64,000 nucleotides of DNA from the sequence record OM319461.1, one strand, 5' to 3'. Both the position numbers and the translations under genes were made by a program. Below the pieces are notes generated by a model. That model had not been told where the DNA came from. It ran no database searches and saw nothing but the letters and a program-made list of their open reading frames with translations. Of the stretch, positions 2,590 through 47,462 are shown one piece after another; the first letter of the stretch is position 1, and the number at the start of each line of letters is the position of its first letter.

Positions 2590-2745
2590 TTATAAATAAA
2601 GGACTAGGCCTTCATGTGTGATTTGAGGAACTGTGGTTTTACCAAGAATTAANTCCTGTGANTCNTCNTGNCGATANAGAGTACCNCCAAGGAANGGNGA
2701 NGATTTNGCATCNGCNAGNATNANCTTAACCTTNTCACCNCTCAT
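2590..2745 (-). CDS. Unlisted 51-aa protein (MxGxKVKxILADAKSSPFLGGTLYR...HEGLVLYL)
   Basis: Below the ORF-track cutoff; 17 of its 18 N bases fall at codon position 3 in this frame; overlaps the stop of the upstream ORF. Confidence 0.75.
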   Translation of the reverse strand: MXGXKVKXXXXDXKXXXFLXGTXYXXXXSQXLILGKTTVPQITHEGLVLYL

Positions 2746-3112
2746 GCGCTCNGCAGNTATNTCTGACTAGNGGCTCNCGGTNNTTNCCNTGCATNAGNGT
2801 AACCATCATNGANGTNTCNTCTANCCANCTNAGNCCTTCNAANTCANNNAGNCCATCTTGAGACTCCATGGCANNNATNNCTGGATTNTATACCATNANN
2901 GTNANNGNATCNGTACGNGCCATCATCATNGTNACAATGANCTTTTCNACACCNTTCCANTTNCCAACCAACATNNNATCNGTATTNGTNGTNAGTTCNT
3001 TCATGCGCTCNGGNAGNTTNTTNCGNGCCCACNCACTNACTTTNTCGTTCTTAAGTGCATTGGTCCANGANGNCAANANNTTGGCNTTGTCTAAACTAGA
3101 AAGCTTGAACAT
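2735..3112 (-). CDS. Hypothetical protein (125 aa, N-rich)
   Basis: Open frame through the ambiguous region; TCTATATAAC promoter-like motif upstream at 3146-3155. Confidence 0.6.
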   Translation of the reverse strand: MFKLSSLDXAXXLXXWTNALKNXKXSXWXXXXXXERMXEXXXNXDXMLVXXWXGXEKXIXXMMMXRXDXXXXMVXNPXXXAMESQDXXXXXEXXXWXXXXXMMVXXMXXXXXEXLVRXXCXAHEX

Positions 3113-3157
3113 ANNATGTTCCTNNTGTGGTTTNAATACANNGTNGTTATATAGAGA

Positions 3158-3544
3158 TCACTTTGCGTTCATTGCATCNGCGATCNGNNTNAANANCTGG
3201 AANNCCNNNNNCATNANTNNCATNGGTGGGTAAAANCCNTAGCCATCNTCNNCNGGGAAGAAGTNNGTNTGNCNGTATTCNCCNACAGTNAANTTNCCNN
3301 NGNAGATCNCTTCNACTTCTGTTTGAGNNTGNANCATACGNGCATTCTGATCTNNNGTCATTNNTTTNGCTTCNNCATCNNANGGNGANGANTCAAANCN
3401 CAATNNNGNNAAGTNGAANNNNCCANNNTCNACNTNCGNGAAGTCGAACCANATNTCATGGTTGTGNTCATAAAATGTGAANGACGTGTGTTTCTTNGGN
3501 TCNAGTNTTTCTTTGTTNNNGAANNTNANTTCTGANCGNAGCAT
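3158..3544 (-). CDS. Hypothetical protein (128 aa, N-rich)
   Basis: Open frame, follows a terminator-like hairpin near 3575-3597; many ambiguous bases. Confidence 0.5.
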   Translation of the reverse strand: MXXSEXXFXNKEXXXXKKHTXFTFYXHNHXXWFDFXXXXXXXFXXXXLXFXXXXXDXEXKXMXXDQNXRMXXXQTEXEXIXXXXXTXXEYXXXXFFXXXDGXXFYPXMXXMXXXFQXXXXIXDAMNAK

Positions 3545-3603
3545 GNGNNATTNCTCNANTAAAAAATAAGNTAAGNGANGAGGGGTTTTACCCCCTCCTC
3601 NTT

Positions 3604-3795
3604 TTAGATTACCATNACTTCACTTGCNATGAAGTTGGCGATTGTTTGNACAGTNGGACTAGGTAAGTCAGCGATGTGNCGAATAGTACCAGGNTTNANN
3701 GTATCNTGGATACCGTANTGTGGCGCTAGTGTTTCGAANCCATCAGCTGTNGCATTATCNAGGATAAGCTCACCAGTCATCATGTCGCCNTCNAA
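3604..3795 (-). CDS. Non-virion RNAP beta' N-terminal subunit, exon 2 (phiKZ gp56.1-like)
   Basis: Begins TTN GAN GGC GAC ATG (F-D-G-D-M) immediately after a G at 3796, completing the NAD|FDGD active-site motif. Confidence 0.85.
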   Translation of the reverse strand, partial: XXGDMMTGELIXDNXTADXFETLAPXYGIXDXXXPGTIXHIADLPSXTXQTIANFXASEXMVI

Positions 3796-5128
3796 CGGNG
3801 TCTTCACATAGGTCGTTAATCTATGCAGTTCTCTTATGAACTTCTCCAGGNTTTCACTGGACGCCGAGACTATATCAATCCTCGGGNNTAAGACTTCTTC
3901 AGTCAACCCGAGGCGTGTGCNTTTGGNNGCCACTTGGCCNCTACAGGGNGCAGAATCCCTTAGTCGTTGAACCTTTACCATATNTATCNTCACNGATATA
4001 CNTAGGCACTTGGCTGCTNGAANTGTCCATTATCAAAANCCTTAGGCTCTCACCATAGNNCATCCCAACGTCTTTTCTGACTTTCGTCACCNTTGCCGTN
4101 TATCCTTTCGGATTCCGTTTTGGTGNTGGGCTTTAGACTTTACCAGCAATTAACACACTCTCACCCGTATGTCACCATANGGGCGGACTTACAATTTAAA
4201 NTTCCANNCNTTGAAAGAAGNNTTTTCTCTTCTTCATCCTANNNAGTCGNNTNCCNTTNATCTTNGTTTTCNNTATNANNTCNCGAATACTNNTNCCAGN
4301 GANNTCNNNGCNNGTNCTCATNAACCANGCANTNATGTCNTCNNNNGTNCNNTGATTNTNCCTGAANNNTTCAGGAAANTCACCNTCNAGACTAAANAAG
4401 AAACCNCNNGTNGGGTANTCCTTGCCTTTCTTTANTACNCGCTTNATNTTTGANTTNGGTACATNTATCTGTCTNGCNANNGANGCNACATTGANATCNA
4501 CANANANNTTTCCTGTNTCNATNTGNTTAGNATANACAGAATCAGTTACCNNNAANGTNCCNGGANTNACTCNNTCTTCTANNTTNGGCANTTGNACGAT
4601 AAATGACTATCGTTCTCATACCANCCNGAAACNNTCANNTGATATGAAAGCTNNGCNGNAGANANACCNATCTTTATCNGANGTNNCNTTNANNCCNTCN
4701 GANTTAAACCAAATNTNNTTGNCTTTNTCNAAAACNTCCAAGGACTTCATTTCNGTCCTNAGNCCCANNNNATANGCATGTAGAAGATTNCCNCNATANG
4801 NNGTNNANTCNAAATTNNTNGCATNNGGNTTNTGNTTNTCNCCATNTANATGATTNACNACCTTNAANNATNACTGGNTCTGGATTTATNACCCANGATT
4901 CNGCAACNAGACGATGNANNANAATNGTCTTGNTCGNCATCNGGNGAGGNNAGAGTNAGATACCANTTTTCCTTNGGTGGATTGATACTCTNCTTCTTGT
5001 TTNNNNTNCAGNTTATAGACNNTTCCNCANNCANNNANNGCNAGNGAAGGATGNTGNNNNGANCGTCTGAAAATCATGCCGTTNATCANGATTTCCATNN
5101 ANCCTCCTGAGAGGTATTGNNTTANTTT
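3796..5128 (-). mobile_element. Group I intron 1 (in the nvRNAP beta' DFDGD motif)
   Basis: Minus strand: P AATTGCTGG (4151-4143), R TTCAACGACTA (3971-3961), S GATATAGTC (3876-3868), terminal G at 3796, IGS GTCCGC at 4188-4183; splicing restores the motif. Confidence 0.88.
4189..5098 (-). CDS. Intron-encoded HNH homing endonuclease (apparent frameshifts; artefact or pseudogene)
   Basis: CAGGAGG RBS then ATG at 5098; fragments HRLVAESW.INP and KVVNHxDG.K.N are HNH-like but lie in shifting frames in an N-dense region; TAA at 4189-4191 abuts the IGS. Confidence 0.65.
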
Positions 5129-6555: not shown

Positions 6556-8493
6556 CTAGATGTAGATGTGACCAGGGATGTGGTTACCGAATTGGCTACC
6601 TGCTGCACCAACGTTTGCACGGAACACATTGTTAACTACGTTACCGTCAATTGCTTGACCGTAAACGAAGCCGCTTGCTAGCTGGCTGATGATTTGAGTA
6701 TCAACTAGACCACGTGGGTTCATGTTGATGCCCGCAACAGACATAGCAGCTGCCATGCGTGGACCTAGCTCAGGGTTGAAGAATACACGGATGTATAGAG
6801 TATCGAAGTTACCTTCAGCCGATGGCTCAAGAGCAACGATATCTTTACGACGACCGTCTAGACGTTCTAGACCTTGAGCACCGTCAGTTGCACCAGGGAT
6901 GAATGATTCAGAGAATGCATTCACTGGAGAATCGATTGATGCTGCTTGCTCTTTAGCTGCTGCTACTGCAAATAGCGTATCGATGTGACGGATGTCAGAT
7001 GGAGAACCATCAGGTAGGTTGTATTCACCACCGTGAACGATAACTGTGTTAGCTTGGACAACTTCTTTGTCTTTAGCTTGAGCCCACTGTTTAGAGAACT
7101 CACCGCCAGTCATTGCGTCGAACAGGTTGATCAATGCATCGTTAGCGCCAGATACACGTTTAGCCGCAGCTAGGAATAGCTGTTGAGTCCAAGATTCAGC
7201 AGTACCGATACCGATGTCCATTGCTAGTGTCATTGAGTTATGCACGAAGTATGCGTCACAGAATGCACGGAATGTAACAGAGTCAGTAGAAGAAGCTGCT
7301 TGAGTGTACTCAATCATTTTTGGCTTAGGAGTAAACTGAACACCAGCACCAGCGTATGGTTCGTATTGGTAACCTAGTACACCTAGATCACGAGAGATAG
7401 GACCACGCTTAGCAGGGTTAGCGAAGATTGATTCCCAGTTACGACCAGATGCCAACAGAGTTGTAGACATTAGACCGATTACTGGAGTTAGTGGGTTTTC
7501 GATAGTTACACGTGCACAAGACTCAGATGCATCAACACCTGTTAGTACTAGTAGCGCATGGTTTTCTGGACGAGCGCCATTGTGCATCATACCTGGTTGC
7601 ATTTGTGGCATGATGCCAGGAGTACGGATAGTATCGAACTTAACTGCTGTACGAGAAAGTAGAGCAGACATACCGTCGTCATGTGGGTCGAAGCTGTTGT
7701 TCTTACGCTCTGAAGCGCGAACTGTGATAACTGCGTCACATGCTGTTGCACGGCCATTGCTCATTACAACGTTTTGACCAGGCAGGATTTCTGTGTCAAC
7801 GTCAACTTGAACTTCTTGGCTCTTGAACAGAGACACGTCAACCAAGTTAGCAGGGTTTGCTTTAGACTTGATTGCGTTTGCTGCTAGGTTGTAGATGCGC
7901 TCAACGTTACCTTCTTCAAGGATTGGTTGGTTCTTACCTACAGCGTAGAAGTGTACAGGCACAACTGCTTCACCAGCTACTTGGAATTTCTCTGCTAGGA
8001 AAGCACGTACTTTACCGATGTAGCGTTCGTTCCAGCATTTAGATACTGGGAAGTCGATTGTGATTTTCTTACCGCCGCCTGCGAAGTTTTTGTTAACTAG
8101 CTCTTCGTGTTGACGCATTGGAGCGTAAAGAAGTGCTTCAGGTAGAAGTGCGTAGAAGAAAACACGAGACTGAACTTTCTTAGCGTATACCATGATAGGT
8201 AGAGCTAGATCAGCTGGCTTAGCGTGGAAGAACTTAACTGCGTCTGCGCTACCGTCGCCTTTTTGGATTTCTTCAGTCGCTTCTACGAACTTAGCGAATG
8301 TACCTTCACCTAGAGAAGATACTTGAGTGTGACCGAATGCTGCAAGCATAGACTTGAAGCCGCCAGTTTGTTGTGCAGTTTGTTGTGGTTGAGCTGCTGC
8401 TGGAGCTGCTTGAGTTTGCACTTGTGGCTGAGCTACTTCTACTTGAGTTTCAGCTGATTTGTTTTGTTGTGCGTTTGGTGCTACGAATGTCAT
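6556..8493 (-). CDS. chmA: Chimallin (phage nucleus shell protein)
   Basis: 645 aa with a disordered Q/A-rich N-terminus; diagnostic synteny (DNA pol - opposite-strand core gene - ChmA - nvRNAP beta'). Call rests on size and synteny, not on alignment. Confidence 0.8.
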   Translation of the reverse strand: MTFVAPNAQQNKSAETQVEVAQPQVQTQAAPAAAQPQQTAQQTGGFKSMLAAFGHTQVSSLGEGTFAKFVEATEEIQKGDGSADAVKFFHAKPADLALPIMVYAKKVQSRVFFYALLPEALLYAPMRQHEELVNKNFAGGGKKITIDFPVSKCWNERYIGKVRAFLAEKFQVAGEAVVPVHFYAVGKNQPILEEGNVERIYNLAANAIKSKANPANLVDVSLFKSQEVQVDVDTEILPGQNVVMSNGRATACDAVITVRASERKNNSFDPHDDGMSALLSRTAVKFDTIRTPGIMPQMQPGMMHNGARPENHALLVLTGVDASESCARVTIENPLTPVIGLMSTTLLASGRNWESIFANPAKRGPISRDLGVLGYQYEPYAGAGVQFTPKPKMIEYTQAASSTDSVTFRAFCDAYFVHNSMTLAMDIGIGTAESWTQQLFLAAAKRVSGANDALINLFDAMTGGEFSKQWAQAKDKEVVQANTVIVHGGEYNLPDGSPSDIRHIDTLFAVAAAKEQAASIDSPVNAFSESFIPGATDGAQGLERLDGRRKDIVALEPSAEGNFDTLYIRVFFNPELGPRMAAAMSVAGINMNPRGLVDTQIISQLASGFVYGQAIDGNVVNNVFRANVGAAGSQFGNHIPGHIYI

Positions 8494-8561
8494 CGTGGAC
8501 TCCTGGTTTCTTTGTGGTTAATCAATTCGAATTGATTGGTTTAATGTTCCAATCCATCATT

Positions 8562-8571
8562 GTTATATAGA
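8562..8571 (-). promoter_or_regulatory. Early-type promoter motif TCTATATAAC upstream of chmA
   Basis: Variant of TCTATATTAC repeated before several operons; phiKZ early consensus is TATATTAC. Confidence 0.6.
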
Positions 8572-8642
8572 AATCAATATTTCTTGAAATCAACTCTAAA
8601 GGGGGTGGTAATCACCCCGTACTGGTTTCCCAGTACGAGTGT

Positions 8643-8655
8643 CATACTATTAGGT
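8643..8655 (-). promoter_or_regulatory. Late-type promoter motif ACCTAATAGTATG
   Basis: Identical 13-mer at 22430-22442(+); near-identical copies in the 18-19 kb array; ends in TATG like phiKZ late promoters. Confidence 0.55.
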
Positions 8656-8830
8656 ATAAACACTAGTAAGTTTTACTGGGAGATTCATTATCGAAAGAGA
8701 TCGACTGATCACTTCCTATATAATGGAGATAGAGTGTTAATTTTGAAATACATATTCATAAACATCTGGGTTATATAGATATCGGCTTTTCTTGAAATCA
8801 AATTAAATAGAGGATTAACAGGAGGAAACT

Positions 8831-13734: not shown

Positions 13735-14077
13735 GACAATACTCCAAGGTTATCATTATTACCTCTGGTTCCAACAGGATAAGCTTTAAGTCACCCTCGC
13801 CATTAGTTAACTCCCAGGAAGTAGCCAGGGCAGTTAGGTCCTCTTGATTTAAAGAAGAGCGAAAGATTTCATAAAGCTCATGTACGTACTCCTCATAGTC
13901 TTCCCCAAATAAAGGAAAGGCTATGGGATGGCAAGCCTCGTTGATGGTAGTCGAGTCAACCGATTCAATCATTCCTCGGATGATGATCTCTGACATCTCT
14001 ATCATTTCGTGGTTTGCCGTACCCAAGAAAGCAGAGGCATTTTCCATTCGGATTACAACCGTCTTGCTTATATTCAT
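13664..14077 (-). CDS. Acidic hypothetical protein (137 aa)
   Basis: ATGA-coupled to the upstream ORF. Confidence 0.65.
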   Translation of the reverse strand: MNISKTVVIRMENASAFLGTANHEMIEMSEIIIRGMIESVDSTTINEACHPIAFPLFGEDYEEYVHELYEIFRSSLNQEDLTALATSWELTNGEGDLKLILLEPEVIMITLEYCHVPDSPVTSTASLRLPCTIGPAV

Positions 14078-18074: not shown

Positions 18075-18164
18075 ACTTCGCCTACCTCTTATTAACTAAT
18101 ACGATTGAAGGAGTAACTTTAATTAACTAAAATTATACCCATAGGATTCGCTGTCATGAATGAA

Positions 18165-18285
18165 AAGAAAAAAAAAATAAACTATAACCTCCCACCCCGA
18201 AGGGCAGGAGGAATAGCAAGAGAGAACCTGAATGAATCCAGGTGTCCAATCCCGACCAAAGAATTGGATGCGTCACTTAACCATA
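18165..18285 (-). ncRNA. Candidate small RNA, array unit 5 (about 120 nt)
   Basis: ACCTAATCTTATG at 18294-18282; two hairpins (TCCAAT/ATTGGA, CCTG/CAGG); C/U-rich linker; terminator 18211-18188 plus long U-run. Confidence 0.6.
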
Positions 18286-18302
18286 AGATTAGGTGACCGA
18301 AT

Positions 18303-18595
18303 AAAAAATAAGATAAGGGGGTAGGGGCAACACCCCTACCACCATCGATGTTTAGGGACCAACTCATCCCGAGTCAATCCGTAACGATACAAACGTTATG
18401 AAATTTAAAAAAGCAGTAACTATTAAGCATTGTGCTTGTGGACCCTAAGGAAAGTCCGAAGGTAGGACAACACGAGAATGTCATCACAACTCACTTAACC
18501 CATGGTAACAGGACATGACCATTTAGAAGTAAGTCAGCTTTATTGAGGTTAATCATTAAAAGCTTAAGTTCAACAACAAAGGTTTCTTTGCTATA
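18303..18595 (-). ncRNA. Candidate small RNA, array unit 4 (about 290 nt, may be two RNAs)
   Basis: TAATCATATAG at 18601-18591; terminator GGTAGGGG/CCCCTACC 18340-18320 plus U-run; no ORF. Confidence 0.5.
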
Positions 18596-18613
18596 TGATT
18601 ACACTAGGCGGTT

Positions 18614-18785
18614 AAAAAGAAATTCACCCTCCCACCAAAGGCAGGAGGGTAGCTCTAGGAATCATTATGTCTAATATCAGAAAGCCACCACCACGATCAG
18701 AGGAGTGAACAGTTTTCCAAACGATGACGTGCCTAACCAATTAGGCAAGCAGAAAAAGCAGAAAGAGATCAACACTTTTACTATA
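18614..18785 (-). ncRNA. Candidate small RNA, array unit 3 (about 170 nt)
   Basis: ACCTAATAGTATA at 18794-18782; GCCTAA/TTAGGC hairpin; CACTCCTCT; terminator 18650-18626 plus U-run. Confidence 0.6.
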
Positions 18786-18804
18786 CTATTAGGTAGAAAC
18801 AAAC

Positions 18805-19117
18805 AAAAAGAATAATTAGCTTCCCCGCCATAGGCAGGGAGGCTTCACACTCTTAACGGTTTCGTTGCAGATCATAAGGTAAACTGCAATGGGTCAATCT
18901 CATGCAGATGACTTTAGAAGGCAGCCTCCCAACCATAGGAAAGGAGGCATCACAACTAAAACAATCTAAATTGGAGGCTTCACTCAAACAATTACCAAAC
19001 AGGTAAGAAATTAGAGAGACTATCATGCGACAAAGGTACAGGATACCAATGAACAATGAAAATGACTTAAGGAGATTCATCAACACTTAGGAGAGTAATT
19101 AATGTACTGAAGTCATA
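18805..19117 (-). ncRNA. Candidate small RNA, array unit 2 (about 310 nt)
   Basis: ACCCAATAGTATG at 19126-19114; multiple CTCC motifs; three GTGA(A/T)GCCTCC repeats; terminator 18843-18819 plus U-run. Confidence 0.6.
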
Positions 19118-19149
19118 CTATTGGGTGTGGTTGTTTTTTTTTAACGACA

Positions 19150-19270
19150 AAAGAAAAATACCTACCCCCTCCCGTTTGGGAGAGGGATGGTAGTTCAGAG
19201 GAGATAGACAACACAGAGACTACTCGCCAGTCTACTGCATTCACGCCGTCGTCATAACATGATTGTCTAC
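19150..19270 (-). ncRNA. Candidate small RNA, array unit 1 (about 120 nt)
   Basis: ACCCAATTGTGTAG variant at 19280-19267; closing stem TAGACAA/TTGTCTA; TCTCCTCT; terminator 19193-19161 plus U-run. Confidence 0.5.
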
Positions 19271-19379
19271 ACAATTGGGTATAATCCTTTTGAACTTTCT
19301 TCAGGTCTTATGGGGACAGGCTTCAGCACCATCTGATCAAAAATAACCAGTTGATTAAATTATTTGACACGAGCTTATT

Positions 19380-20600
19380 ATATCTTTTACTTATATCTTT
19401 AGATATAATTAGGAAAAAGATATTAATAACAGATTAAAAGAATATAAAGAGAGGTCCATTTACTTTATCTAAAGATAAAGATAAATATAATAACGCGCGA
19501 GAGCGCGTGGTTATTTTTCTCATAAAAATGATTTTTGAAGATTTCTCCCGTGAGGGAGGAATCATGATTATTTATATCTTTCGTAGATTCTAAGGATTCT
19601 AGGGATTGAATCATTTTGAACATCTCATGGGTATTATGTAGTAGAATCTCGTGATGTGTAACTTCATCTTAGTAAAACTAGATACAATATCATAATCTAA
19701 CTTAACTAACATGAATTTATAACATATCATAATTTTATTGCACTATGTGGTAAGGTTATTCTTATTCTACGACACAATATATTAAGATCTTTTGAATTTT
19801 ACTATGAGCCTTTAAATCTTAACAAAGTTTCTATTTTGTTTGCTTCTCTTAAAGGACTTAGTTAAAACTTGTGTGAGTTAATTCAATCATTAACTCCTTA
19901 GAGCTCCTGTATGGTTCTCTAAGACAATTATCCATTTCTATCTGATGCATCAATCAGATACAATAAGTTAAACTTCCTCATGGGTTATGTGGAAGCTAGT
20001 CGAACTTATATAGCTAAGTGATAACTTTCACAGAAGTTATCGGTATCAGATAAACTCATCTGATCCAGAACAACTCAATACTACCGAATTAACATTAAAA
20101 AATTCCCCAGTATCCAGAGTTATCCACATCGATGTATCCACCTCTCCCCTTAACGGGGGAGGGAGTGGGTATATCTCCGTCTACGAGCAAATAGCATATC
20201 CCTATACACGAAAATCACCAGATTTCACATAGAGACAAAAATAATAATATCTCCAGCTCTTTCGAGCCAGATGAAAAAAAAAATCGAAAATTTTTATATT
20301 AGCTTGTGGTTGTTGCTTATATCTTCTTCCCTATGCTTCTCTATCGATGATAGTCTAATGACATAGCTAGCTACTAGTTCTCATCTATCTTACATCTAGA
20401 TGAATCCTATCTATCTCTGTCTAGTCTTTCTATCTCTATCTCCCTATTATCTCTTTCTAAGATATACGCAAAAAACCCCCTCCCAGACGGTTCCCCCTTT
20501 CGAAAACTAAATCATTAGATTTAACTGTTTTTTATGATTTATAATTGAGAGAAAGAAAAAAAAAGAATAAGTACAGGAGAGAGGATAACCCCCTCTCCAT
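19380..20600. other. AT-rich ORF-free region, candidate replication origin
   Basis: No ORF of 60 aa or more; many TATCT/AGATA repeats, palindromes (19489-19515, 20140-20170), homopolymer tracts, one perfect TTATCCACA. Confidence 0.45.
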
Positions 20601-38620: not shown

Positions 38621-38717
38621 TCTTGCCACGGGCTAGCTGTTCGCTAGCAACGTTGGTGAAAAAAAAAATAAGACAAGATAGCCCTCCTGCCCGAAGGCAG
38701 GAGGGTGTCTTTATTTT

Positions 38718-39728
38718 TTAAAAGTAAAACTTGGCGACAACTGATTCTTTTTCATCTAGTGACCATTCTTTCGTGTACTGCATTGTACGGTTACGGATAG
38801 TTAGACTGTAAAGAGCACCATCATCATTAAATTGATACTCGAATTTAAAGATAAGTGAATCGCGCTTTGTTGTCGTTGCTTCTAAATACGTAGCGGCAAG
38901 TAACTTCTCTTTACCTTCGGTATAGTAGAATCTTGTCAGATCAGTATCATCTCGTTTTATATCGAGTGCAAGACCAAGGTTATTGTACTCAGTGATGACA
39001 TCCTTGCCTTTGAGTTTCGGATGTACCGAATCAGATTTTGTACGGATGAATCTACGGTCATCGAAAGTACTGACGGTTGTTTCAACACGCGGGAGGTGTG
39101 GCACATGTAGCTGGTACTCTTTGCGTGATGCCGCAGGGTTGTCCGCAACAACCTTGGTGATAAGAACTTCTGGAGTCTTTTCGATTTTGTTTTCACCGTT
39201 TTCGGAGTACCAACGTCCAGTAATTGCATGGGCACCAAACGACGATGTTTCAACCCAATCTCCAATTTCTTTCTTAGGGTGCATCCCAGTATCGTCATAG
39301 TCGAGGTACAAGCGTTCTCTTGTATAGTCTTCTAATTCAAATACTTCTTGCGCTACACGAGTGCTGTGCTCCATGACTAGTTCTTGATGGTCGGCAAGTA
39401 CCTTGTCAAGACTTGGCAATATCCCGCCGAGAGACATATGCTCGCGTGCCTTTGCTTGTAGTGTGTCAGTATTAATGTCCTTTGTCACAAGACAAAGTGT
39501 ATGACTGCGCGCAGTGACAACATATAGTCTGTTGATGCCATAGTCCATTTTTGTGCGAACTATCGCAGACTGATCTTTAACTGGTTTCCACCCCCAAGCC
39601 TCTAGAAGTTGGCTCTTAAAGATCTGTTCCCATGTCAGTGTTTCTGACTTTACAAGTCGGTCAACAAGTACCGCTGTTTCAGTAGGAATGTTAAGAATTT
39701 CAGCTAGGTTTAATTCACGAGTAAACAT
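38718..39728 (-). CDS. Hypothetical protein with beta-rich C-terminus
   Basis: ORF track 38718..39833; likely start ATG 39728 after GGAG. Confidence 0.7.
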   Translation of the reverse strand: MFTRELNLAEILNIPTETAVLVDRLVKSETLTWEQIFKSQLLEAWGWKPVKDQSAIVRTKMDYGINRLYVVTARSHTLCLVTKDINTDTLQAKAREHMSLGGILPSLDKVLADHQELVMEHSTRVAQEVFELEDYTRERLYLDYDDTGMHPKKEIGDWVETSSFGAHAITGRWYSENGENKIEKTPEVLITKVVADNPAASRKEYQLHVPHLPRVETTVSTFDDRRFIRTKSDSVHPKLKGKDVITEYNNLGLALDIKRDDTDLTRFYYTEGKEKLLAATYLEATTTKRDSLIFKFEYQFNDDGALYSLTIRNRTMQYTKEWSLDEKESVVAKFYF

Positions 39729-39774
39729 AATGGGTTCTCCATACAATGGCAGGTTCTCTACCAAAGGTTTAAAA

Positions 39775-40200
39775 AAATAAAAATAATGAGAATAGGCCCA
39801 TATCCAAAGGAGACGGGCACTCACACGTTTCATAGCTTTTGTAAGGTCAATGACTCTTAAAGAAACGAACTACACGCTAGGACGCTTCCCGAAGAGAAAT
39901 TGAGCCACTTGCCTGAGACAGAGTGGCGTTCACACATTAAATGCTAAATTGCTTCTGTAATGTAATCCAGAAGTTAATTGGAAAGTGCGCTGATGCGCGA
40001 GTATTACCATTTGGTAATTAGGTAAAGAGACATAGCCATCGGGAGGAGACTTAATTCCTGAGGCCAAAAGTTTTACAATCGTAACATTCCGCTAGATTGA
40101 AGATGCCCGAACATCTCAGTTACACATATCGTTTCTAACAACGTTGGTTAGCTATGTCTCTTAAATCGTAATAATCAGAGGCCATAAATCATGACCTCTT
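39775..40200 (-). ncRNA. Candidate structured ncRNA locus (about 425 nt)
   Basis: 12-bp long-range stem AAGAGACATAGC/GCTATGTCTCTT (40162-40151 with 40036-40025), at least six further hairpins, terminal hairpin plus U-run at about 39818-39770. Confidence 0.55.
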
Positions 40201-40211
40201 GTTATTAAGAC

Positions 40212-40301
40212 TTAGTCGGCAAACATGCCGTCTTCGTAGTCTGCTTCTTCTGGATCATCAAACGCTAGGTTTGGATCGCATTCGTAATCTTGATCTTCCA
40301 T
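40212..40301 (-). CDS. Unlisted 29-aa acidic peptide MEDQDYECDPNLAFDDPEEADYEDGMFAD
   Basis: TAATG overlap with the stop of the upstream ORF; codon-like periodicity. Confidence 0.65.
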   Translation of the reverse strand: MEDQDYECDPNLAFDDPEEADYEDGMFAD

Positions 40302-40621
40302 TATGCTAGTAGACCTTCATACTTTGCCAGCTCGACTTTCTGTGCTTCGATCTGTGCCTGTACTGTAACAGTAGTTGCACGTCCATTGTTTCCAGGAATC
40401 TTTTCGCGTTTAACACGACCAGGGAAACGTTTGCCGAGCTCAGCCAACTTGAATGAGTTCTTGCAAAGCTCTGCAAGCATGCCTACCAATACACGATCCA
40501 CTGATGGGTCTTGCTTAGGTTGCTTGTGAACAAAACGAGGACTATTGCGATGCTCATCACGAGGTGCTGAACGACGACGATCACCAAAAGTACGACGGCC
40601 ACGGCCATAAAGAGTAGTCAT
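40301..40621 (-). CDS. Basic protein with Arg-rich N-terminus
   Basis: GRGRRTFGDRRRSAPRDEHR; GGAG RBS. Confidence 0.7.
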   Translation of the reverse strand: MTTLYGRGRRTFGDRRRSAPRDEHRNSPRFVHKQPKQDPSVDRVLVGMLAELCKNSFKLAELGKRFPGRVKREKIPGNNGRATTVTVQAQIEAQKVELAKYEGLLA

Positions 40622-40666: not shown

Positions 40667-41095
40667 TTAAGCGTCTGATTCTAGATCGCCAGCGCCAAAG
40701 TCCATACCAGCGACAAGGTCGGTAGCGTAAGACAGAACATCGTCTTTGCCATGCGAGACAATATTGAACGCTGTAACCGAATAGCCGTTTTTAGTTTCGC
40801 CGGCAATTTCAATTTCTTTGTCTACTGTGTGTTCGATTGAGCCACGGGTAGTTTCAAAGTGCGTAGTGATGTGATCTAGATTGTTTTCAGCCATAACTCG
40901 TGCAGATGCAATAAGTGATGCCGCACCAAAGTCAGCCACAAACTCTTCTGCTTTTTCCAGAGTAGCCATTGAAAGACCTTCTGGTAGAACCGACTCCATT
41001 ACTGACTTGTCACCGCTAACGTGGTTACCTGTGATAGTCACGTTCTTTTGTACAGTTTCAGCCATGGTGTTGATCATATCGAATTTAGAAGACAT
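40667..41095 (-). CDS. Hypothetical protein (142 aa)
   Basis: AAGGA RBS; downstream of TCTATATAAC at 41186-41195. Confidence 0.75.
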   Translation of the reverse strand: MSSKFDMINTMAETVQKNVTITGNHVSGDKSVMESVLPEGLSMATLEKAEEFVADFGAASLIASARVMAENNLDHITTHFETTRGSIEHTVDKEIEIAGETKNGYSVTAFNIVSHGKDDVLSYATDLVAGMDFGAGDLESDA

Positions 41096-41252
41096 GTGTA
41101 TTCCTTTTAATGAATGGTTAGTTGCACACTATTGTGCATGCATGTAAATATCAACAATTAGAGTTTAACAACCCTATGCACTTCAGTTATATAGAAATGA
41201 AAAAGCTTTGAAAATAAGATACGGGGCCGAAACCCCGTATCTTTTATTATTA

Positions 41253-46023: not shown

Positions 46024-47462
46024 CAATATCTTCAGGAAGTTCGTTAAGCTTCCCCTGTTTATACAGCTCTGTCATTACAACAGAAAGTAACAGCGCGACT
46101 CACTGTTACGTTGAGACTATATCATACCTGCTTCACTATTACCGCTAACAGGTTCCTTCCGCTTCCATTTAAGGGATTCAATACCCACCCACTTGGGCCG
46201 TACTCTACTCGCTTCTTCATTGTGGTATTTCTCCACAAATCTGCTTTCGATAGTCGTTGAACTTTCCTCGTATCCGTAGACTTAGAGGCTTAGCTGCGCT
46301 AGGGACTTGATGTCCGATTTTCCCAGGTAAAGCATTCTTACGTTGTCTTCTCTATTTCTAGGAAGGATAGTAGCTTTACTTTTAACAGGAGGTTCCCGCA
46401 ATTCAAAAGGATTTAAAGACGACCCGTGTTTTTTCTATCACTATAAAAGCAATAGGTACAGTTGTCGAAAATTCTTTCACCCTTTGTTTTACATCTGTAG
46501 AACAAAGTAGTTTTATTTATTTCCAGGGTCTCATAAGCGTCCTTGGCCGTGAGAAAGATTGTCTCTTTGCCAATATCCATATTTTTGACTATGACCACTC
46601 TCTGTGATGTACAGCGCTCATAATCTTCATATGGATCTTCAAAAGTTCTCCAGTCTTCATCGCCGAGCTTAAATTGCAGTAGCTTGGTGGTGGTTAGCTG
46701 GTGACCTTTCTTTAGCCATTCGCTTATGTAGGTAGGAACAATATCGAAAAAACTAGCAGCCTCGTTGATCTTGGAAAATTCAAAAATCTCTCCAGTCAAA
46801 ACTTTCTTGACGCAGATCTTTTTGGTATTACCAGGAGTCATCGTTTTAGTATTCTCGGTCCATTTTGGTTTTTCTAAAACCAAAGAATATTGTTTCTGTT
46901 CTGGCCAGATAGTCCCTTCGGAAAACTGGACCCGATATTTTATTGCCTCGTATGACATATCCAAGCATACTCCAGCTTCTTTGAGACTTGGATAAAAATC
47001 CACTTCCCCTGTTGAAGCGTCCCTAACTAAGACTGGCTTACATTTGCTGCTTAACTTGTTAAGTCCAGCATGATGACAGTTTTGTTGTGGAGTAGCCCAC
47101 TCTAGGTTGTCGAGGAAATCATCACCCTTTATTCCATTCTTGTGGTTAACATATTTTTCTTCTGGGTTGGCAATTGGCTTAAATGTCAAGCACATTAATC
47201 GATGTCTGCCGATAGTCATCGTATCGCCTTTGTCATTACGTAGACGATAGTGACAATACCCAGCCGGGTTTATCGAACCACTAAGTTCCTTTGTGGTAAT
47301 CGAACTGTAGACAGTGCCGTCTTCATCGATACCATAATCAGGATATCCTGGAATCTGGAAATATTTTAAATTTTCTCTAAGTCTAATCATTTTTCAATGT
47401 CCCAAAATTATTACCATGTAATTAGGGGTATAAACTTAGTTTTTGTACAAGCACCCTTATTG
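46024..47462 (-). mobile_element. Group I intron 2 (in vRNAP beta)
   Basis: 5' exon ends in U (GAT 47463); IGS GTCGTC at about 46423-46418 pairs exon GACGAT; P AATTGCGGGAA, R TTCAACGACTA, S GATATAGTC. Confidence 0.92.
46413..47390 (-). CDS. Intron-encoded HNH homing endonuclease (NUMOD4-HNH-NUMOD1 type)
   Basis: IPGYPDYGIDEDG; HRLMCLTF...VNHKNGIKGDDFLDNLEWATPQQNCHHA; repeated F.S..EAA units. Confidence 0.9.
   Translation of the reverse strand: MIRLRENLKYFQIPGYPDYGIDEDGTVYSSITTKELSGSINPAGYCHYRLRNDKGDTMTIGRHRLMCLTFKPIANPEEKYVNHKNGIKGDDFLDNLEWATPQQNCHHAGLNKLSSKCKPVLVRDASTGEVDFYPSLKEAGVCLDMSYEAIKYRVQFSEGTIWPEQKQYSLVLEKPKWTENTKTMTPGNTKKICVKKVLTGEIFEFSKINEAASFFDIVPTYISEWLKKGHQLTTTKLLQFKLGDEDWRTFEDPYEDYERCTSQRVVIVKNMDIGKETIFLTAKDAYETLEINKTTLFYRCKTKGERIFDNCTYCFYSDRKNTGRL

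What the first reader, a model, noticed from the sequence alone, without database searches (positions are those of the whole stretch)
39775..40200. Large highly structured non-coding locus embedded in an early operon
Minus strand: hairpin AGAGGTCAT/ATGGCCTCT, then a perfect 12-bp stem closing a roughly 115-nt multiloop domain, followed by ATTACC/GGTAAT, GCGC/GCGC, CTTCTG/CAGAAG and GCCACT/AGTGGC hairpins. A final stem displays CUCCUUU in its loop before a U-run. The density of pairing exceeds what a spacer needs, so it is a candidate new ncRNA class or large cis-regulator.
Basis: partly seen in the sequence, partly recalled or inferred. Interest (0 to 1): 0.65.

Follow-up and report, generated by a model that had tools for sequence, protein, structure and literature searches.

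The report
Structured RNA tail of phage early operon
A giant Vibrio phage carries about 430 bases of non-coding but tightly folded RNA after a three-gene early operon; evolution has preserved the fold, it matches no catalogued RNA family, and it is known from only two sister phages with no expression data.

Summary
The window is Vibrio phage C-ZP2022, a phiKZ-like jumbo phage. The 483-bp gap at 39729-40211 (minus strand) has no conserved ORF. It folds far better than shuffles (z -5.4) on the minus strand only.

With the fold predicted from C-ZP2022 alone, sister phage vB_pir03 keeps 16 of 22 changed base pairs, 7 by double compensatory changes (chance expectation 0.9). Among the 360 window/strand tests across the 64 kb with at least 10 changed pairs, this is the most extreme.

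No Rfam family matches even at E<10, although the two real group I introns in the same window score E~1e-7. ARAGORN finds no tRNA or tmRNA.

The locus has no promoter of its own. A canonical phage early promoter at about 41195 drives three small genes, and the first terminator-like hairpin with a U-rich tail downstream closes this RNA. I therefore read it as the structured 3' end of an early transcript (confidence 0.45), possibly processed into a stable RNA.

Two more distant relatives carry differently sequenced but similarly built folded spacers at the same position. The RNA itself occurs only in C-ZP2022 and pir03. Function is untested.

The scan has noted comparable orphan structured RNAs in other jumbo phages, but not this one.

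The parts
41186..41214 (-). Phage early (virion-RNAP type) promoter, TTTCAA-N12-TCTATATAAC. It directly follows the terminator of the upstream late operon.
   Evidence: PWM built from 29 genome copies scores this site 38; background is below 10. Sequence read. The core is conserved at the same place in pir03, sm033 and L022. The phiKZ early motif TATATTAC is given in PMC7058600 and PMC7598289.
40212..41095 (-). Early operon genes: 238 (40667-41095, 142 aa), 237 (40301-40621, 106 aa, arginine-rich N-terminus) and 236 (40212-40301, 29-aa acidic peptide ending YEDGMFAD).
   Evidence: Annotation; translations; homologues of 237 aligned. The acidic ORF motif YEDG[HMQ][FW] is also present in sm033, L022 and L026.
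40163..40214 (-). H1: an irregular hairpin of about 22 bp that includes the UAA stop of gene 236. The upper stem is AGAGGUCAU/AUGGCCUCU; the lower stems are AAUAAC/GAUUAUU and UAAGUC/GAUUUA.
   Evidence: Folds. It is 98% identical in pir03. The same architecture, with covarying upper and lower stems, occurs in sm033 and L022.
40025..40162 (-). Domain 1: 14-bp closing stem P1 (40149-40162 / 40025-40038); hairpin Ha (40111-40144); inner helix P2 (40106-40110 / 40039-40043) enclosing hairpins Hb (40076-40099) and Hc (40044-40059).
   Evidence: RNAalifold. Compensatory double changes: two in P1, one each in P2, Hb and Hc. It is 82% identical, and its 4-nt indel lies in a single-stranded linker. 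Covariance model R1 finds it only in C-ZP2022 and pir03.
40003..40018 (-). H2 hairpin AUUACC-AAAU-GGUAAU, preceded by CCUAAU.
   Evidence: It is nearly identical to CCUAAUUAC-AUG-GUAAU inside the HNH group I intron at 47409-47426.
39987..39998 (-). H3 hairpin GCGC-AUCA-GCGC.
   Evidence: The only change in pir03 is in the loop.
39931..39982 (-). Segment around H4, almost invariant (a 43-nt invariant run spans alignment columns 223-265). Two alternative folds are possible (CUUCUG/CAGAAG or UCCA/UGGA plus UACAU/GUGUG).
   Evidence: No substitutions are available to choose between the folds.
39904..39927 (-). H5 hairpin GCCACU...AGUGGC.
   Evidence: One compensatory double change (U-A to C-G) and one wobble change.
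39847..39903 (-). H6: a 57-nt three-tier hairpin (UCAAU/AUUGA, CUCUU/AAGAG, GGAAGCG/CGUUUCU, CUA/UAG).
   Evidence: Its few changes lie in internal loops or are U-A to U-G.
39819..39846 (-). Conserved, mostly single-stranded A-rich stretch (CCUUACAAAAGCUAUGAAACGUGUGAGU). It has one change in 28 nt.
39770..39818 (-). Terminator-like hairpin (39796-39818) with a pyrimidine/U-rich tail (39770-39795).
   Evidence: Two compensatory double changes and three wobble changes at 70% identity. The simple scan did not call it, because the U-run is offset by about 12 nt. Other terminators of this phage also have a spacer before the U-run.
38718..39745 (-). Downstream gene 235 (P0001, 336 aa, possibly YD/RHS-repeat-like) with its RBS GGAGAACCC.
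   Evidence: The in-frame upstream extension to 39833 is closed by a stop in pir03 (alignment, read by eye).

Best explanation
The 430-nt element is the structured 3'-terminal part of an early transcript of a nucleus-forming Vibrio jumbo phage.

Proposed course of events: transcription starts at the early promoter near 41195 and runs through genes 238, 237 and 236. It continues through hairpin H1, which has no U-run, then through the closed multi-helix domain 1 and a string of hairpins (domain 2). It ends at the hairpin plus U-rich tail at 39770-39818, just before the separately expressed gene 235.

Shown here:
- The region is non-coding.
- It folds on the minus strand only.
- The fold is kept by compensatory and wobble changes.
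- H1 and domain 2 are far more conserved in sequence than neutral sites.
- The locus has no early-type promoter of its own.
- The nearest upstream promoter is a canonical early one.

Inferred:
- The RNA acts in cis to end early transcription ahead of gene 235.
- Its stable helices protect the early message from 3' exonucleases.
- H1 and P1, each about 20 bp when stacked, may be double-strand-RNase processing sites that release a stable RNA of about 215-400 nt.
For: - No Rfam match and no conserved ORF.
- z -5.4 on the minus strand against -3.2 on the plus strand.
- 7 double compensations, 9 wobble-compatible changes and 6 breaks, against 0.9, 11 and 19 expected.
- Empirical control over the whole 64-kb alignment: kept fraction 0.76-0.78 on the minus strand, against a median of 0.37 and a 99th percentile of 0.69; the plus strand gives 0.35.
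- Identity is 0.98 in H1 and 0.92 in domain 2. Four-fold degenerate sites are 0.65 genome-wide and 0.49-0.68 in the neighbouring genes.
- The early-promoter PWM scores the site at 41195 at 38, and the TATTAC site at 40173 at -24.
- Early operons elsewhere in this genome end at a hairpin plus U-run directly before the next promoter (contexts).
- The same promoter-to-three-genes-to-H1-to-closed-domain layout is present in sm033 and in Logan contig L022, whose spacers are also strongly folded (z -2.6 and -6.0).
Against: - There are no transcript data for either phage, so the 5' and 3' ends are inferred.
- The terminal hairpin's U-run is offset and failed the simple terminator scan.
- A stabiliser or insulator would not need 400 nt, a multi-way junction or long invariant unpaired stretches, so a more specific function is likely.
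- Middle and late promoters of this phage group are poorly defined (PMC7598289), so an internal start cannot be excluded.
- Intergenic DNA in these phages is generally well conserved (0.88-1.0), so sequence identity alone is weak evidence.
Confidence: 0.45

Rival explanations
1. It is a trans-acting, stable non-coding RNA or RNP scaffold, either cut out of the early transcript or started from an unrecognised promoter. Its specific fold would be the function, for example binding the arginine-rich protein 237 encoded just upstream, or a host factor.
For: - It is large and has a multi-way junction.
- Domain 2 is 92% identical, with 43- and 47-nt nearly invariant runs that include unpaired bases.
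- The same genome has other promoter-plus-terminator small-RNA cassettes placed after early operons (scan note s1-156893).
- The basic N-terminus of protein 237 is conserved in sm033 and L022.
Against: - No promoter of its own by the early PWM, and only a defective match to motif B.
- No paralogue, and no antisense target of 13 nt or more shared by both phages.
- No expression data.
- The sequences of the relatives' spacers are unrelated.
Confidence: 0.25
2. It is a cis-regulatory leader (attenuator) of the downstream gene 235. A sensor fold would be followed by a conditional terminator and then the RBS, controlling read-through from early into late expression.
For: - The layout fold-terminator-45 nt-RBS-gene matches classical attenuators.
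- The RNA and gene 235 co-occur only in C-ZP2022 and pir03.
- In sm033 and L022 the folded spacer runs straight into the next gene without a terminator.
Against: - I found no conserved antiterminator pairing. The only complement to the terminator's 5' arm (CGGGCA in domain 1) is not maintained in pir03 (by inspection).
- No riboswitch or leader family matches.
- The terminator's lower stem evolves freely, as expected for a constitutive hairpin.
Confidence: 0.12
3. There are two units, not one. H1 plus domain 1 would be the 3' UTR or intercistronic element shared with the relatives. Domain 2 plus the terminator (about 215 nt) would be a separate small-RNA cassette like those at 18.1-19.3 kb, started at the CCUAAU...AUGG element.
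For: - ACCTAATTACCAAATGG at 40007-40023 resembles the cassette promoter ACCYAATAGTATG.
- The relatives have only the H1-plus-closed-domain part.
- Domain 2 is sized and terminated like the cassettes.
Against: - The element has 3 extra bases and AATG instead of TATG. In phiKZ all four bases of TATG are required (PMC7598289).
- The motif forms hairpin H2. Its only other copy is inside an intron rather than at a cassette.
Confidence: 0.1
4. It is a decaying remnant of a gene or mobile element (for example an ORF-less intron) with no function of its own.
For: - The slot between the acidic ORF and the tail tube gene is variable among relatives.
- An 18-nt motif is shared with the HNH intron.
Against: - Compensatory evolution and strand-specific wobble changes show selection on the RNA fold.
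- There is no group I core and no RF00028 hit, whereas the true introns score E~1e-7.
- The flanking ORFs are complete.
Confidence: 0.05

Closest known systems
Intercistronic RNase III processing hairpins of phage T7 early mRNA (R sites). This comparison rests on my own knowledge and was not tested here.
   Same: Irregular hairpins of about 20 bp (H1; P1 stacked on P2) placed between or after the cistrons of a phage early operon. Their expected role is 3'-end formation and protection of the upstream message.
   Different: Here the element is 430 nt with a multi-way junction and six further hairpins. No cleavage is shown. The phage transcribes with its own multisubunit polymerases inside a phage nucleus.
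3'UTR-derived small RNAs of enterobacteria and Vibrio (CpxQ, OppZ and CarZ type). This comparison rests on my own knowledge.
   Same: The non-coding RNA shares the terminator of an upstream operon and has no promoter of its own. A conserved single-stranded stretch lies just 5' of the terminator (39819-39846).
   Different: It is several times larger. No processing site, Hfq dependence or target has been identified, and no antisense match is shared by both phages.
Large structured phage- and prophage-associated RNAs in Rfam (ROOL, GOLLD and similar).
   Same: It is a phage-borne, several-hundred-nucleotide, highly structured RNA of unknown function.
   Different: No match to any Rfam 15 model even at E<10. 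It is not next to tRNAs. It is single copy and known from only two genomes.
Small-RNA cassettes of the same phage (window 18.1-19.3 kb and 22.4 kb; scan notes s1-156893 and s1-157153).
   Same: Same genome and same strand logic: non-coding units after early operons, with terminators whose 5' arms are CCUCC-like.
   Different: Those units each have an ACCYAATAGTATG promoter and are 150-330 nt long. This locus lacks that promoter and shows no sequence similarity to them.

Membership tests
Any Rfam 15 family | Covariance-model match at the gathering score, or at least at E<10 | tested here: not met
   0 hits at gathering over the whole window. Over 39650-40300 there were only two chance-level hits (E 1.2 and 6.5): one inside gene 235 at 39669-39703, the other on H1 at 40162-40208.
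Group I intron | RF00028 similarity and the conserved P/Q/R/S core (AAUUGCGGGAA, GUUCAnnGACUA, GAUAUAGUC) | tested here: not met
   The two real introns in this window score 40 bits, E~1e-7, in the same search mode, and they show the core strings. The locus gives no hit at E<10 and has none of the strings.
Group I intron | Interrupts a gene whose exons join into one reading frame | tested here: not met
   The upstream ORF ends at a stop that is conserved in relatives, and the downstream gene has its own RBS and ATG. The in-frame extension is closed in pir03.
tRNA / tmRNA | ARAGORN detection | tested here: not met
   0 genes in the window.
Autonomous early-promoter-driven gene of this phage | TTTCA-N12-TCTATATWACC-N4-TG promoter immediately upstream | tested here: not met
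   The best PWM score near 40173 is -24, whereas all 30 real sites score above 18.
Small-RNA cassette of this phage (motif-B promoter plus terminator) | ACCYAATAGTATG (or TATR) promoter at the 5' end | tested here: inconclusive
   The element at 40007-40023 is ACCTAATTACCAAATGG. The CCTAAT half matches, but the spacing is 3 nt longer and TATG is replaced by AATG.
Intrinsic terminator | G+C-rich hairpin directly followed by a U-run | tested here: inconclusive
   The hairpin at 39796-39818 is kept by two double compensations. The U-run starts about 12 nt after the stem, or 3-6 nt after a possible GAG/CUC extension, and the simple scan did not call it.
3'UTR-derived sRNA / processed 3' fragment | A discrete stable RNA that shares the 3' end of the mRNA | not testable with these tools
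   No RNA run holds this phage.
RNase III intercistronic processing site | Cleavage by RNase III within an irregular hairpin of about 20 bp | not testable with these tools
   The geometry of H1 and of P1 stacked on P2 is compatible. Cleavage cannot be computed.

The most novel reading that the evidence does not exclude
It is a previously uncatalogued family of large (about 400 nt) structured RNA in nucleus-forming Vibrio jumbo phages. It would be made early in infection from the 3' end of an operon that also encodes an arginine-rich protein and an acidic peptide, and would act in trans as an RNP scaffold, decoy or catalytic RNA. The differently sequenced folded spacers at the same position in sm033-like and L022-like phages would then be fast-evolving counterparts of the same functional slot.
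Probability: 0.25. Interest if true: 0.65.

Novelty: new member of a known kind. Interest (0 to 1): 0.45.

Why it matters
Nucleus-forming jumbo phages transcribe their genomes with their own polymerases inside a protein shell, and almost nothing is known about their non-coding RNA. In phiKZ, dRNA-seq predicted one 75-nt sRNA that a Northern blot did not confirm (PMC8244752).

This locus shows evolution-backed folding in an early transcript. Relatives keep a matching architectural slot at the same position. If the RNA is processed and stable, it would be an accessible first case for studying RNA-level control, or an RNP, in this phage group. If it is only a 3' stabiliser, it is still useful for annotation and for engineering these phages, which are considered for aquaculture phage therapy (PMC7765460).

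Tried and rejected
**Searches for more homologues (all blank)**
- Phage GenBank set by blastn: only C-ZP2022 and pir03.
- IMG/VR by protein and by three DNA patterns.
- JGI metagenomes by tail tube protein and by one DNA pattern.
- GTDB genomes by two patterns.
- Downstream protein P0001 has only two variants among 5.8 billion proteins.
- The laid SRA runs (X1, X3, X4, X5) hold only C-ZP2022-like or pir03-like DNA, and no RNA run is listed.
- Covariance model R1 for domain 1 finds nothing in sm033, BONAISHI, Yong XC31 or the Logan/JGI relatives.

**Readings rejected**
- Group I intron.
- tRNA or tmRNA.
- A small protein. The pir03-annotated mini-ORFs are frameshifted or truncated in C-ZP2022, and their changes are mostly non-synonymous.
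- An own early promoter at TATTAC.
- A DNA-level cruciform. All one-sided changes are G-U-compatible on the minus strand only, and the plus strand behaves like background.
- A CsrB-like sponge. By my reading of the sequence there are about five GGA motifs in 430 nt, roughly the chance number.
- A long-range helix closing domain 2 in the C-ZP2022 minimum-energy fold. It is not kept in pir03.

**Context proteins that gave nothing**
- Pfam and PHROGs have no hits for P0001 or for proteins 237 and 238.
- The ESM Atlas gives only weak RHS/YD-like leads for P0001.

Full report
**Identity of the DNA**

The window is Vibrio phage C-ZP2022 (OM319461.1, bases 186001-250000), which gives a 100% match. 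Its tail tube protein has phiKZ-like jumbo phages as relatives. The genome carries split multisubunit RNA polymerase genes, a TROVE gene and a phiKZ-type sheath.

The only close relative in the GenBank phage set is vB_pir03. It is colinear and about 87-88% identical over the window. The next relative is vB_VpaM_sm033, with 75% tail tube identity.

**The observation**

The finding lies in a 483-bp gap (39729-40211) on the minus strand. The gap separates a 29-codon acidic ORF (gene 236, 40212-40301) from a 336-codon hypothetical gene (gene 235, P0001, 38718-39728).

The 436-nt stretch folds at -131 kcal/mol, against -100 +/- 5.8 for shuffles (z -5.4). The other strand gives z -3.2.

The region is non-coding:
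- C-ZP2022 annotates nothing here.
- A 4-nt indel, a 1-nt indel or a premature stop in C-ZP2022 breaks each of the three mini-ORFs annotated in pir03.
- The few codon changes in those mini-ORFs are mostly non-synonymous.

**Is the structure selected?**

RNAalifold on the two sequences gives 132 pairs. Eight are kept through changes on both sides, eleven through one-sided wobble-compatible changes, and none is broken.

That structure is fitted to both sequences, so I repeated the test with the minimum-energy structure of C-ZP2022 alone. In pir03, 7 pairs are changed on both sides and kept, 9 are changed on one side and kept, and 6 are broken. With 52 substitutions placed at random, the expectation is 0.9, 11 and 19 (P<2e-4). 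The reciprocal test gives 6, 8 and 8.

As an empirical control I ran the same procedure on 360 window/strand combinations across the whole 64-kb alignment.
- The locus on the minus strand keeps 76-78% of its changed pairs.
- The median is 37%, the 99th percentile 69% and the maximum 78%.
- The locus ties for the most double compensations (7) while having half the substitutions of the other leaders.
- On the plus strand it scores 35%, like background.

All one-sided changes are transitions that pass through G-U on the minus strand. On the other strand, or in DNA, they would be A-C mismatches. The selected object is therefore a minus-strand RNA.

**Sequence constraint**

Four-fold degenerate sites are 65% identical genome-wide and 49-68% in the three neighbouring genes. 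The parts of the locus compare as follows:

| Part | Identity with pir03 |
|---|---|
| H1 | 98% |
| Domain 2 | 92% |
| Domain 1 | 82% |
| Terminal hairpin | 70% (pairs kept) |

One caveat: intergenic DNA in these two phages is generally 88-100% identical. Identity alone is therefore weaker evidence than the compensations.

**Anatomy (minus strand)**

- H1 (40163-40214) is an irregular hairpin of about 22 bp that contains the stop codon of gene 236.
- Domain 1 (40025-40162) has a 14-bp closing stem and one hairpin. An inner 5-bp helix abuts the closing stem and encloses two more hairpins. Domain 1 holds five of the eight double compensations, and its 4-nt indel lies in a linker.
- Domain 2 (39820-40024) is a row of hairpins. 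H2 is AUUACC/GGUAAU and H3 is GCGC/GCGC. An invariant 43-nt run around H4 has two possible folds. H5 is GCCACU/AGUGGC with one compensation, and H6 is a 57-nt three-tier hairpin. A conserved A-rich, mostly single-stranded 28-mer follows.
- A terminal hairpin (39796-39818) has two compensations and an invariant apex CUCCUUUGG. It is followed by a pyrimidine/U-rich tail.

The U-run is offset from the stem and the simple scan did not call it. Other terminators of this phage also carry a short spacer before the U-run and have CCUCC-type 5' arms.

**Transcription context**

The phiKZ early promoter core is TATATTAC, centred near -10 (PMC7058600 table 2; PMC7598289). C-ZP2022 has 29 exact copies of TCTATATWAC, all on one strand. 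Their extended consensus is TTTCA-N12-TCTATATWACC-N4-TG. A PWM built from them separates 30 sites (score above 18) from everything else (below 10).

- One site (score 38) sits at 41186-41214. It lies directly after the terminator of the protease operon and upstream of genes 238, 237 and 236.
- The TATTAC just 5' of domain 1 (40173) scores -24, so it is not an early promoter.
- A second motif, ACCYAATAGTATG, contains the late-type TATG of phiKZ (PMC7598289). It precedes the small-RNA cassettes at 18-19 kb and 22.4 kb (lead from scan note s1-156893). The element between domains 1 and 2 (ACCTAATTACCAAATGG) matches only its first half, with different spacing and AATG instead of TATG.

The simplest reading is that early transcription from about 41180 runs through the three genes and the whole folded region and stops at about 39790. 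That makes a 1.4-kb RNA whose last 30% is this structure.

**Relatives**

I found more distant relatives through the tail tube protein and fetched their contigs. In sm033 (L003) and in a Logan contig (L022, 70% tail tube identity) the layout is the same:
- an early-promoter core;
- a gene of about 145 aa;
- a basic protein of about 110 aa;
- a small acidic ORF ending YEDGH(F/W);
- an H1-like hairpin with conserved base AAGAG/CUCUU and covarying upper and lower stems;
- a domain of about 150 nt closed by a long-range stem of 8 bp (sm033) or 10-15 bp (L022).

These spacers give z -2.6 and -6.0. Their sequences are not alignable with domain 1, and covariance model R1 does not find them. They have no domain 2 and no terminator; the next gene follows directly.

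In L026 (55% identity) the slot holds a motif-B promoter and a 52-codon membrane ORF instead. In BONAISHI and L042 the arrangement differs again. The position is therefore a conserved 'structured spacer' slot with fast-changing content. The 400-nt version is specific to C-ZP2022 and pir03.

**What it is not**

- No Rfam 15 family matches at gathering or at E<10. In the same permissive mode the two real group I introns of this window score E~1e-7. They show the canonical core strings that this locus lacks.
- No tRNA or tmRNA.
- Single copy per genome.
- No copy in IMG/VR, JGI metagenomes or GTDB genomes by the probes I used.
- The downstream protein has only two variants among 5.8 billion proteins.
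- Of the listed public runs, the four I laid hold only C-ZP2022-like or pir03-like DNA, and no RNA run is listed.

**Mechanism**

My best reading (0.45) is a cis-acting 3'-terminal module. It would end early transcription ahead of gene 235. Its stacked helices would shield the early message from 3' exonucleases. It may also be processed at H1 or P1. This resembles the RNase III sites of T7 early mRNA and 3'UTR-derived sRNAs (my own knowledge, not tested here).

The size, the junction and the invariant unpaired runs argue that something more specific is going on. A processed trans-acting RNA or RNP therefore remains a serious rival (0.25), perhaps with the arginine-rich protein 237. Lesser rivals are:
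- an attenuator for gene 235 (0.12; I found no conserved antiterminator);
- a two-unit reading, with domain 2 as a separate cassette (0.10);
- a functionless remnant (0.05; contradicted by the compensations).

**Novelty and score**

The locus is a real RNA structure backed by evolution and absent from Rfam. So far it is a two-genome orphan with no transcript data and no function. This scan has already reported comparable orphan structured RNAs in other jumbo phages (s1-412091, s1-156032) and in this genome (s1-157153, s1-156893). I rate it a new member of a known kind (an uncatalogued phage structured RNA or 3'-UTR element), with interest 0.45.

Noticed in passing
window 41186-41214 and 7 other sites (63700, 26658, 22395, 16443, 8777, 8569, 3153, minus strand); 29 exact copies in the whole genome: There is a very sharp early-promoter consensus, TTTCA-N12-TCTATATWACC-N4-TG. 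All copies lie on one strand. Most directly follow a hairpin plus U-run whose U-run overlaps the TTTCA element. The core is also conserved in sm033, BONAISHI and metagenomic relatives.
   Followed up: yes
window 22431(+), 19125, 18793, 18293, 12284, 8654 (-); L026 7655-7667(-): A second promoter-like motif, ACCYAATAGTATG (containing the phiKZ late-type TATG), sits in front of the small-RNA cassettes and a few genes. It is conserved in a relative with only 55% tail tube identity.
   Followed up: partly
window 40003-40023(-) and 47409-47426(-): CCUAAUUACC-AAAU-GGUAAUA in this locus is nearly identical to CCUAAUUAC-AUG-GUAAUA, which lies 36 nt upstream of the HNH ORF inside the group I intron of the RNAP beta gene. 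These are the only two copies in the genome, and pir03 lacks that intron. The meaning is unknown (a shared protein site, or a relic of exchange).
   Followed up: partly
L003 9663-9917(-) (sm033); L022 11806-12024(-) (Logan SRR23478455): The syntenic spacers are also strongly folded (z -2.6 and -6.0). Each has an H1-like hairpin over the stop codon, then a multi-hairpin domain of about 150 nt closed by a stem of 8 bp (sm033) or 10-15 bp (L022). Their sequences are unrelated to C-ZP2022 domain 1.
   Followed up: partly
window 40212-40621(-) and homologues in L002, L003, L022, L026: A conserved early gene pair: a small basic protein with an arginine/lysine-rich N-terminus, translationally coupled (UAAUG) to a 29-50-aa very acidic peptide ending (D/E)YEDG[HMQ][FW]. 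Neither has a Pfam or PHROG match.
   Followed up: partly
run X5, contig record 13, matching window 39763-39786 and 40170-40193 only: A 2.3-kb contig from the sample that holds a pir03-like phage matches just the two borders of the locus (H1 and the U-rich tail, 2 mismatches each). About 515 nt of unrelated sequence lie between the matches, against 383 nt between the same two stretches here. It may be a third variant of the slot from another phage, or a chance low-complexity match. I could not fetch it.
   Followed up: no
window 18075-19400(-), 38671-38706, 39796-39818: Terminators of this phage typically have CCUCC-like 5' arms and GGGAGG-like 3' arms, with a short spacer before the U-run. 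In pir03 the terminal hairpin of this locus reads UCACCUCCUU, which by my recollection equals the 3' end of 16S rRNA; I did not check this with a tool and it is probably coincidental.
   Followed up: no
window 13735-14073 and 8494-8830: Two further non-coding gaps of about 340 nt, 93-94% identical to pir03. The first follows the early operon driven from 16443. The second lies upstream of gene 6556-8493 and holds two early-promoter cores (8777, 8569) and one motif-B site (8654). I did not examine either for RNA structure.
   Followed up: no
window 2735-3981 (record 188.7-190 kb): The C-ZP2022 record contains 1,994 N in all, many of them scattered through this stretch. Gene calls and identities there are unreliable.
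   Followed up: no
L026 6980-7678(-): In a 55%-identity relative the slot after the acidic ORF is 700 nt long. It holds a motif-B promoter, a 52-codon hydrophobic ORF and a strong terminal hairpin (CCCCUCCUCUAUCC/GGAUAGAGGAGGG).
   Followed up: no
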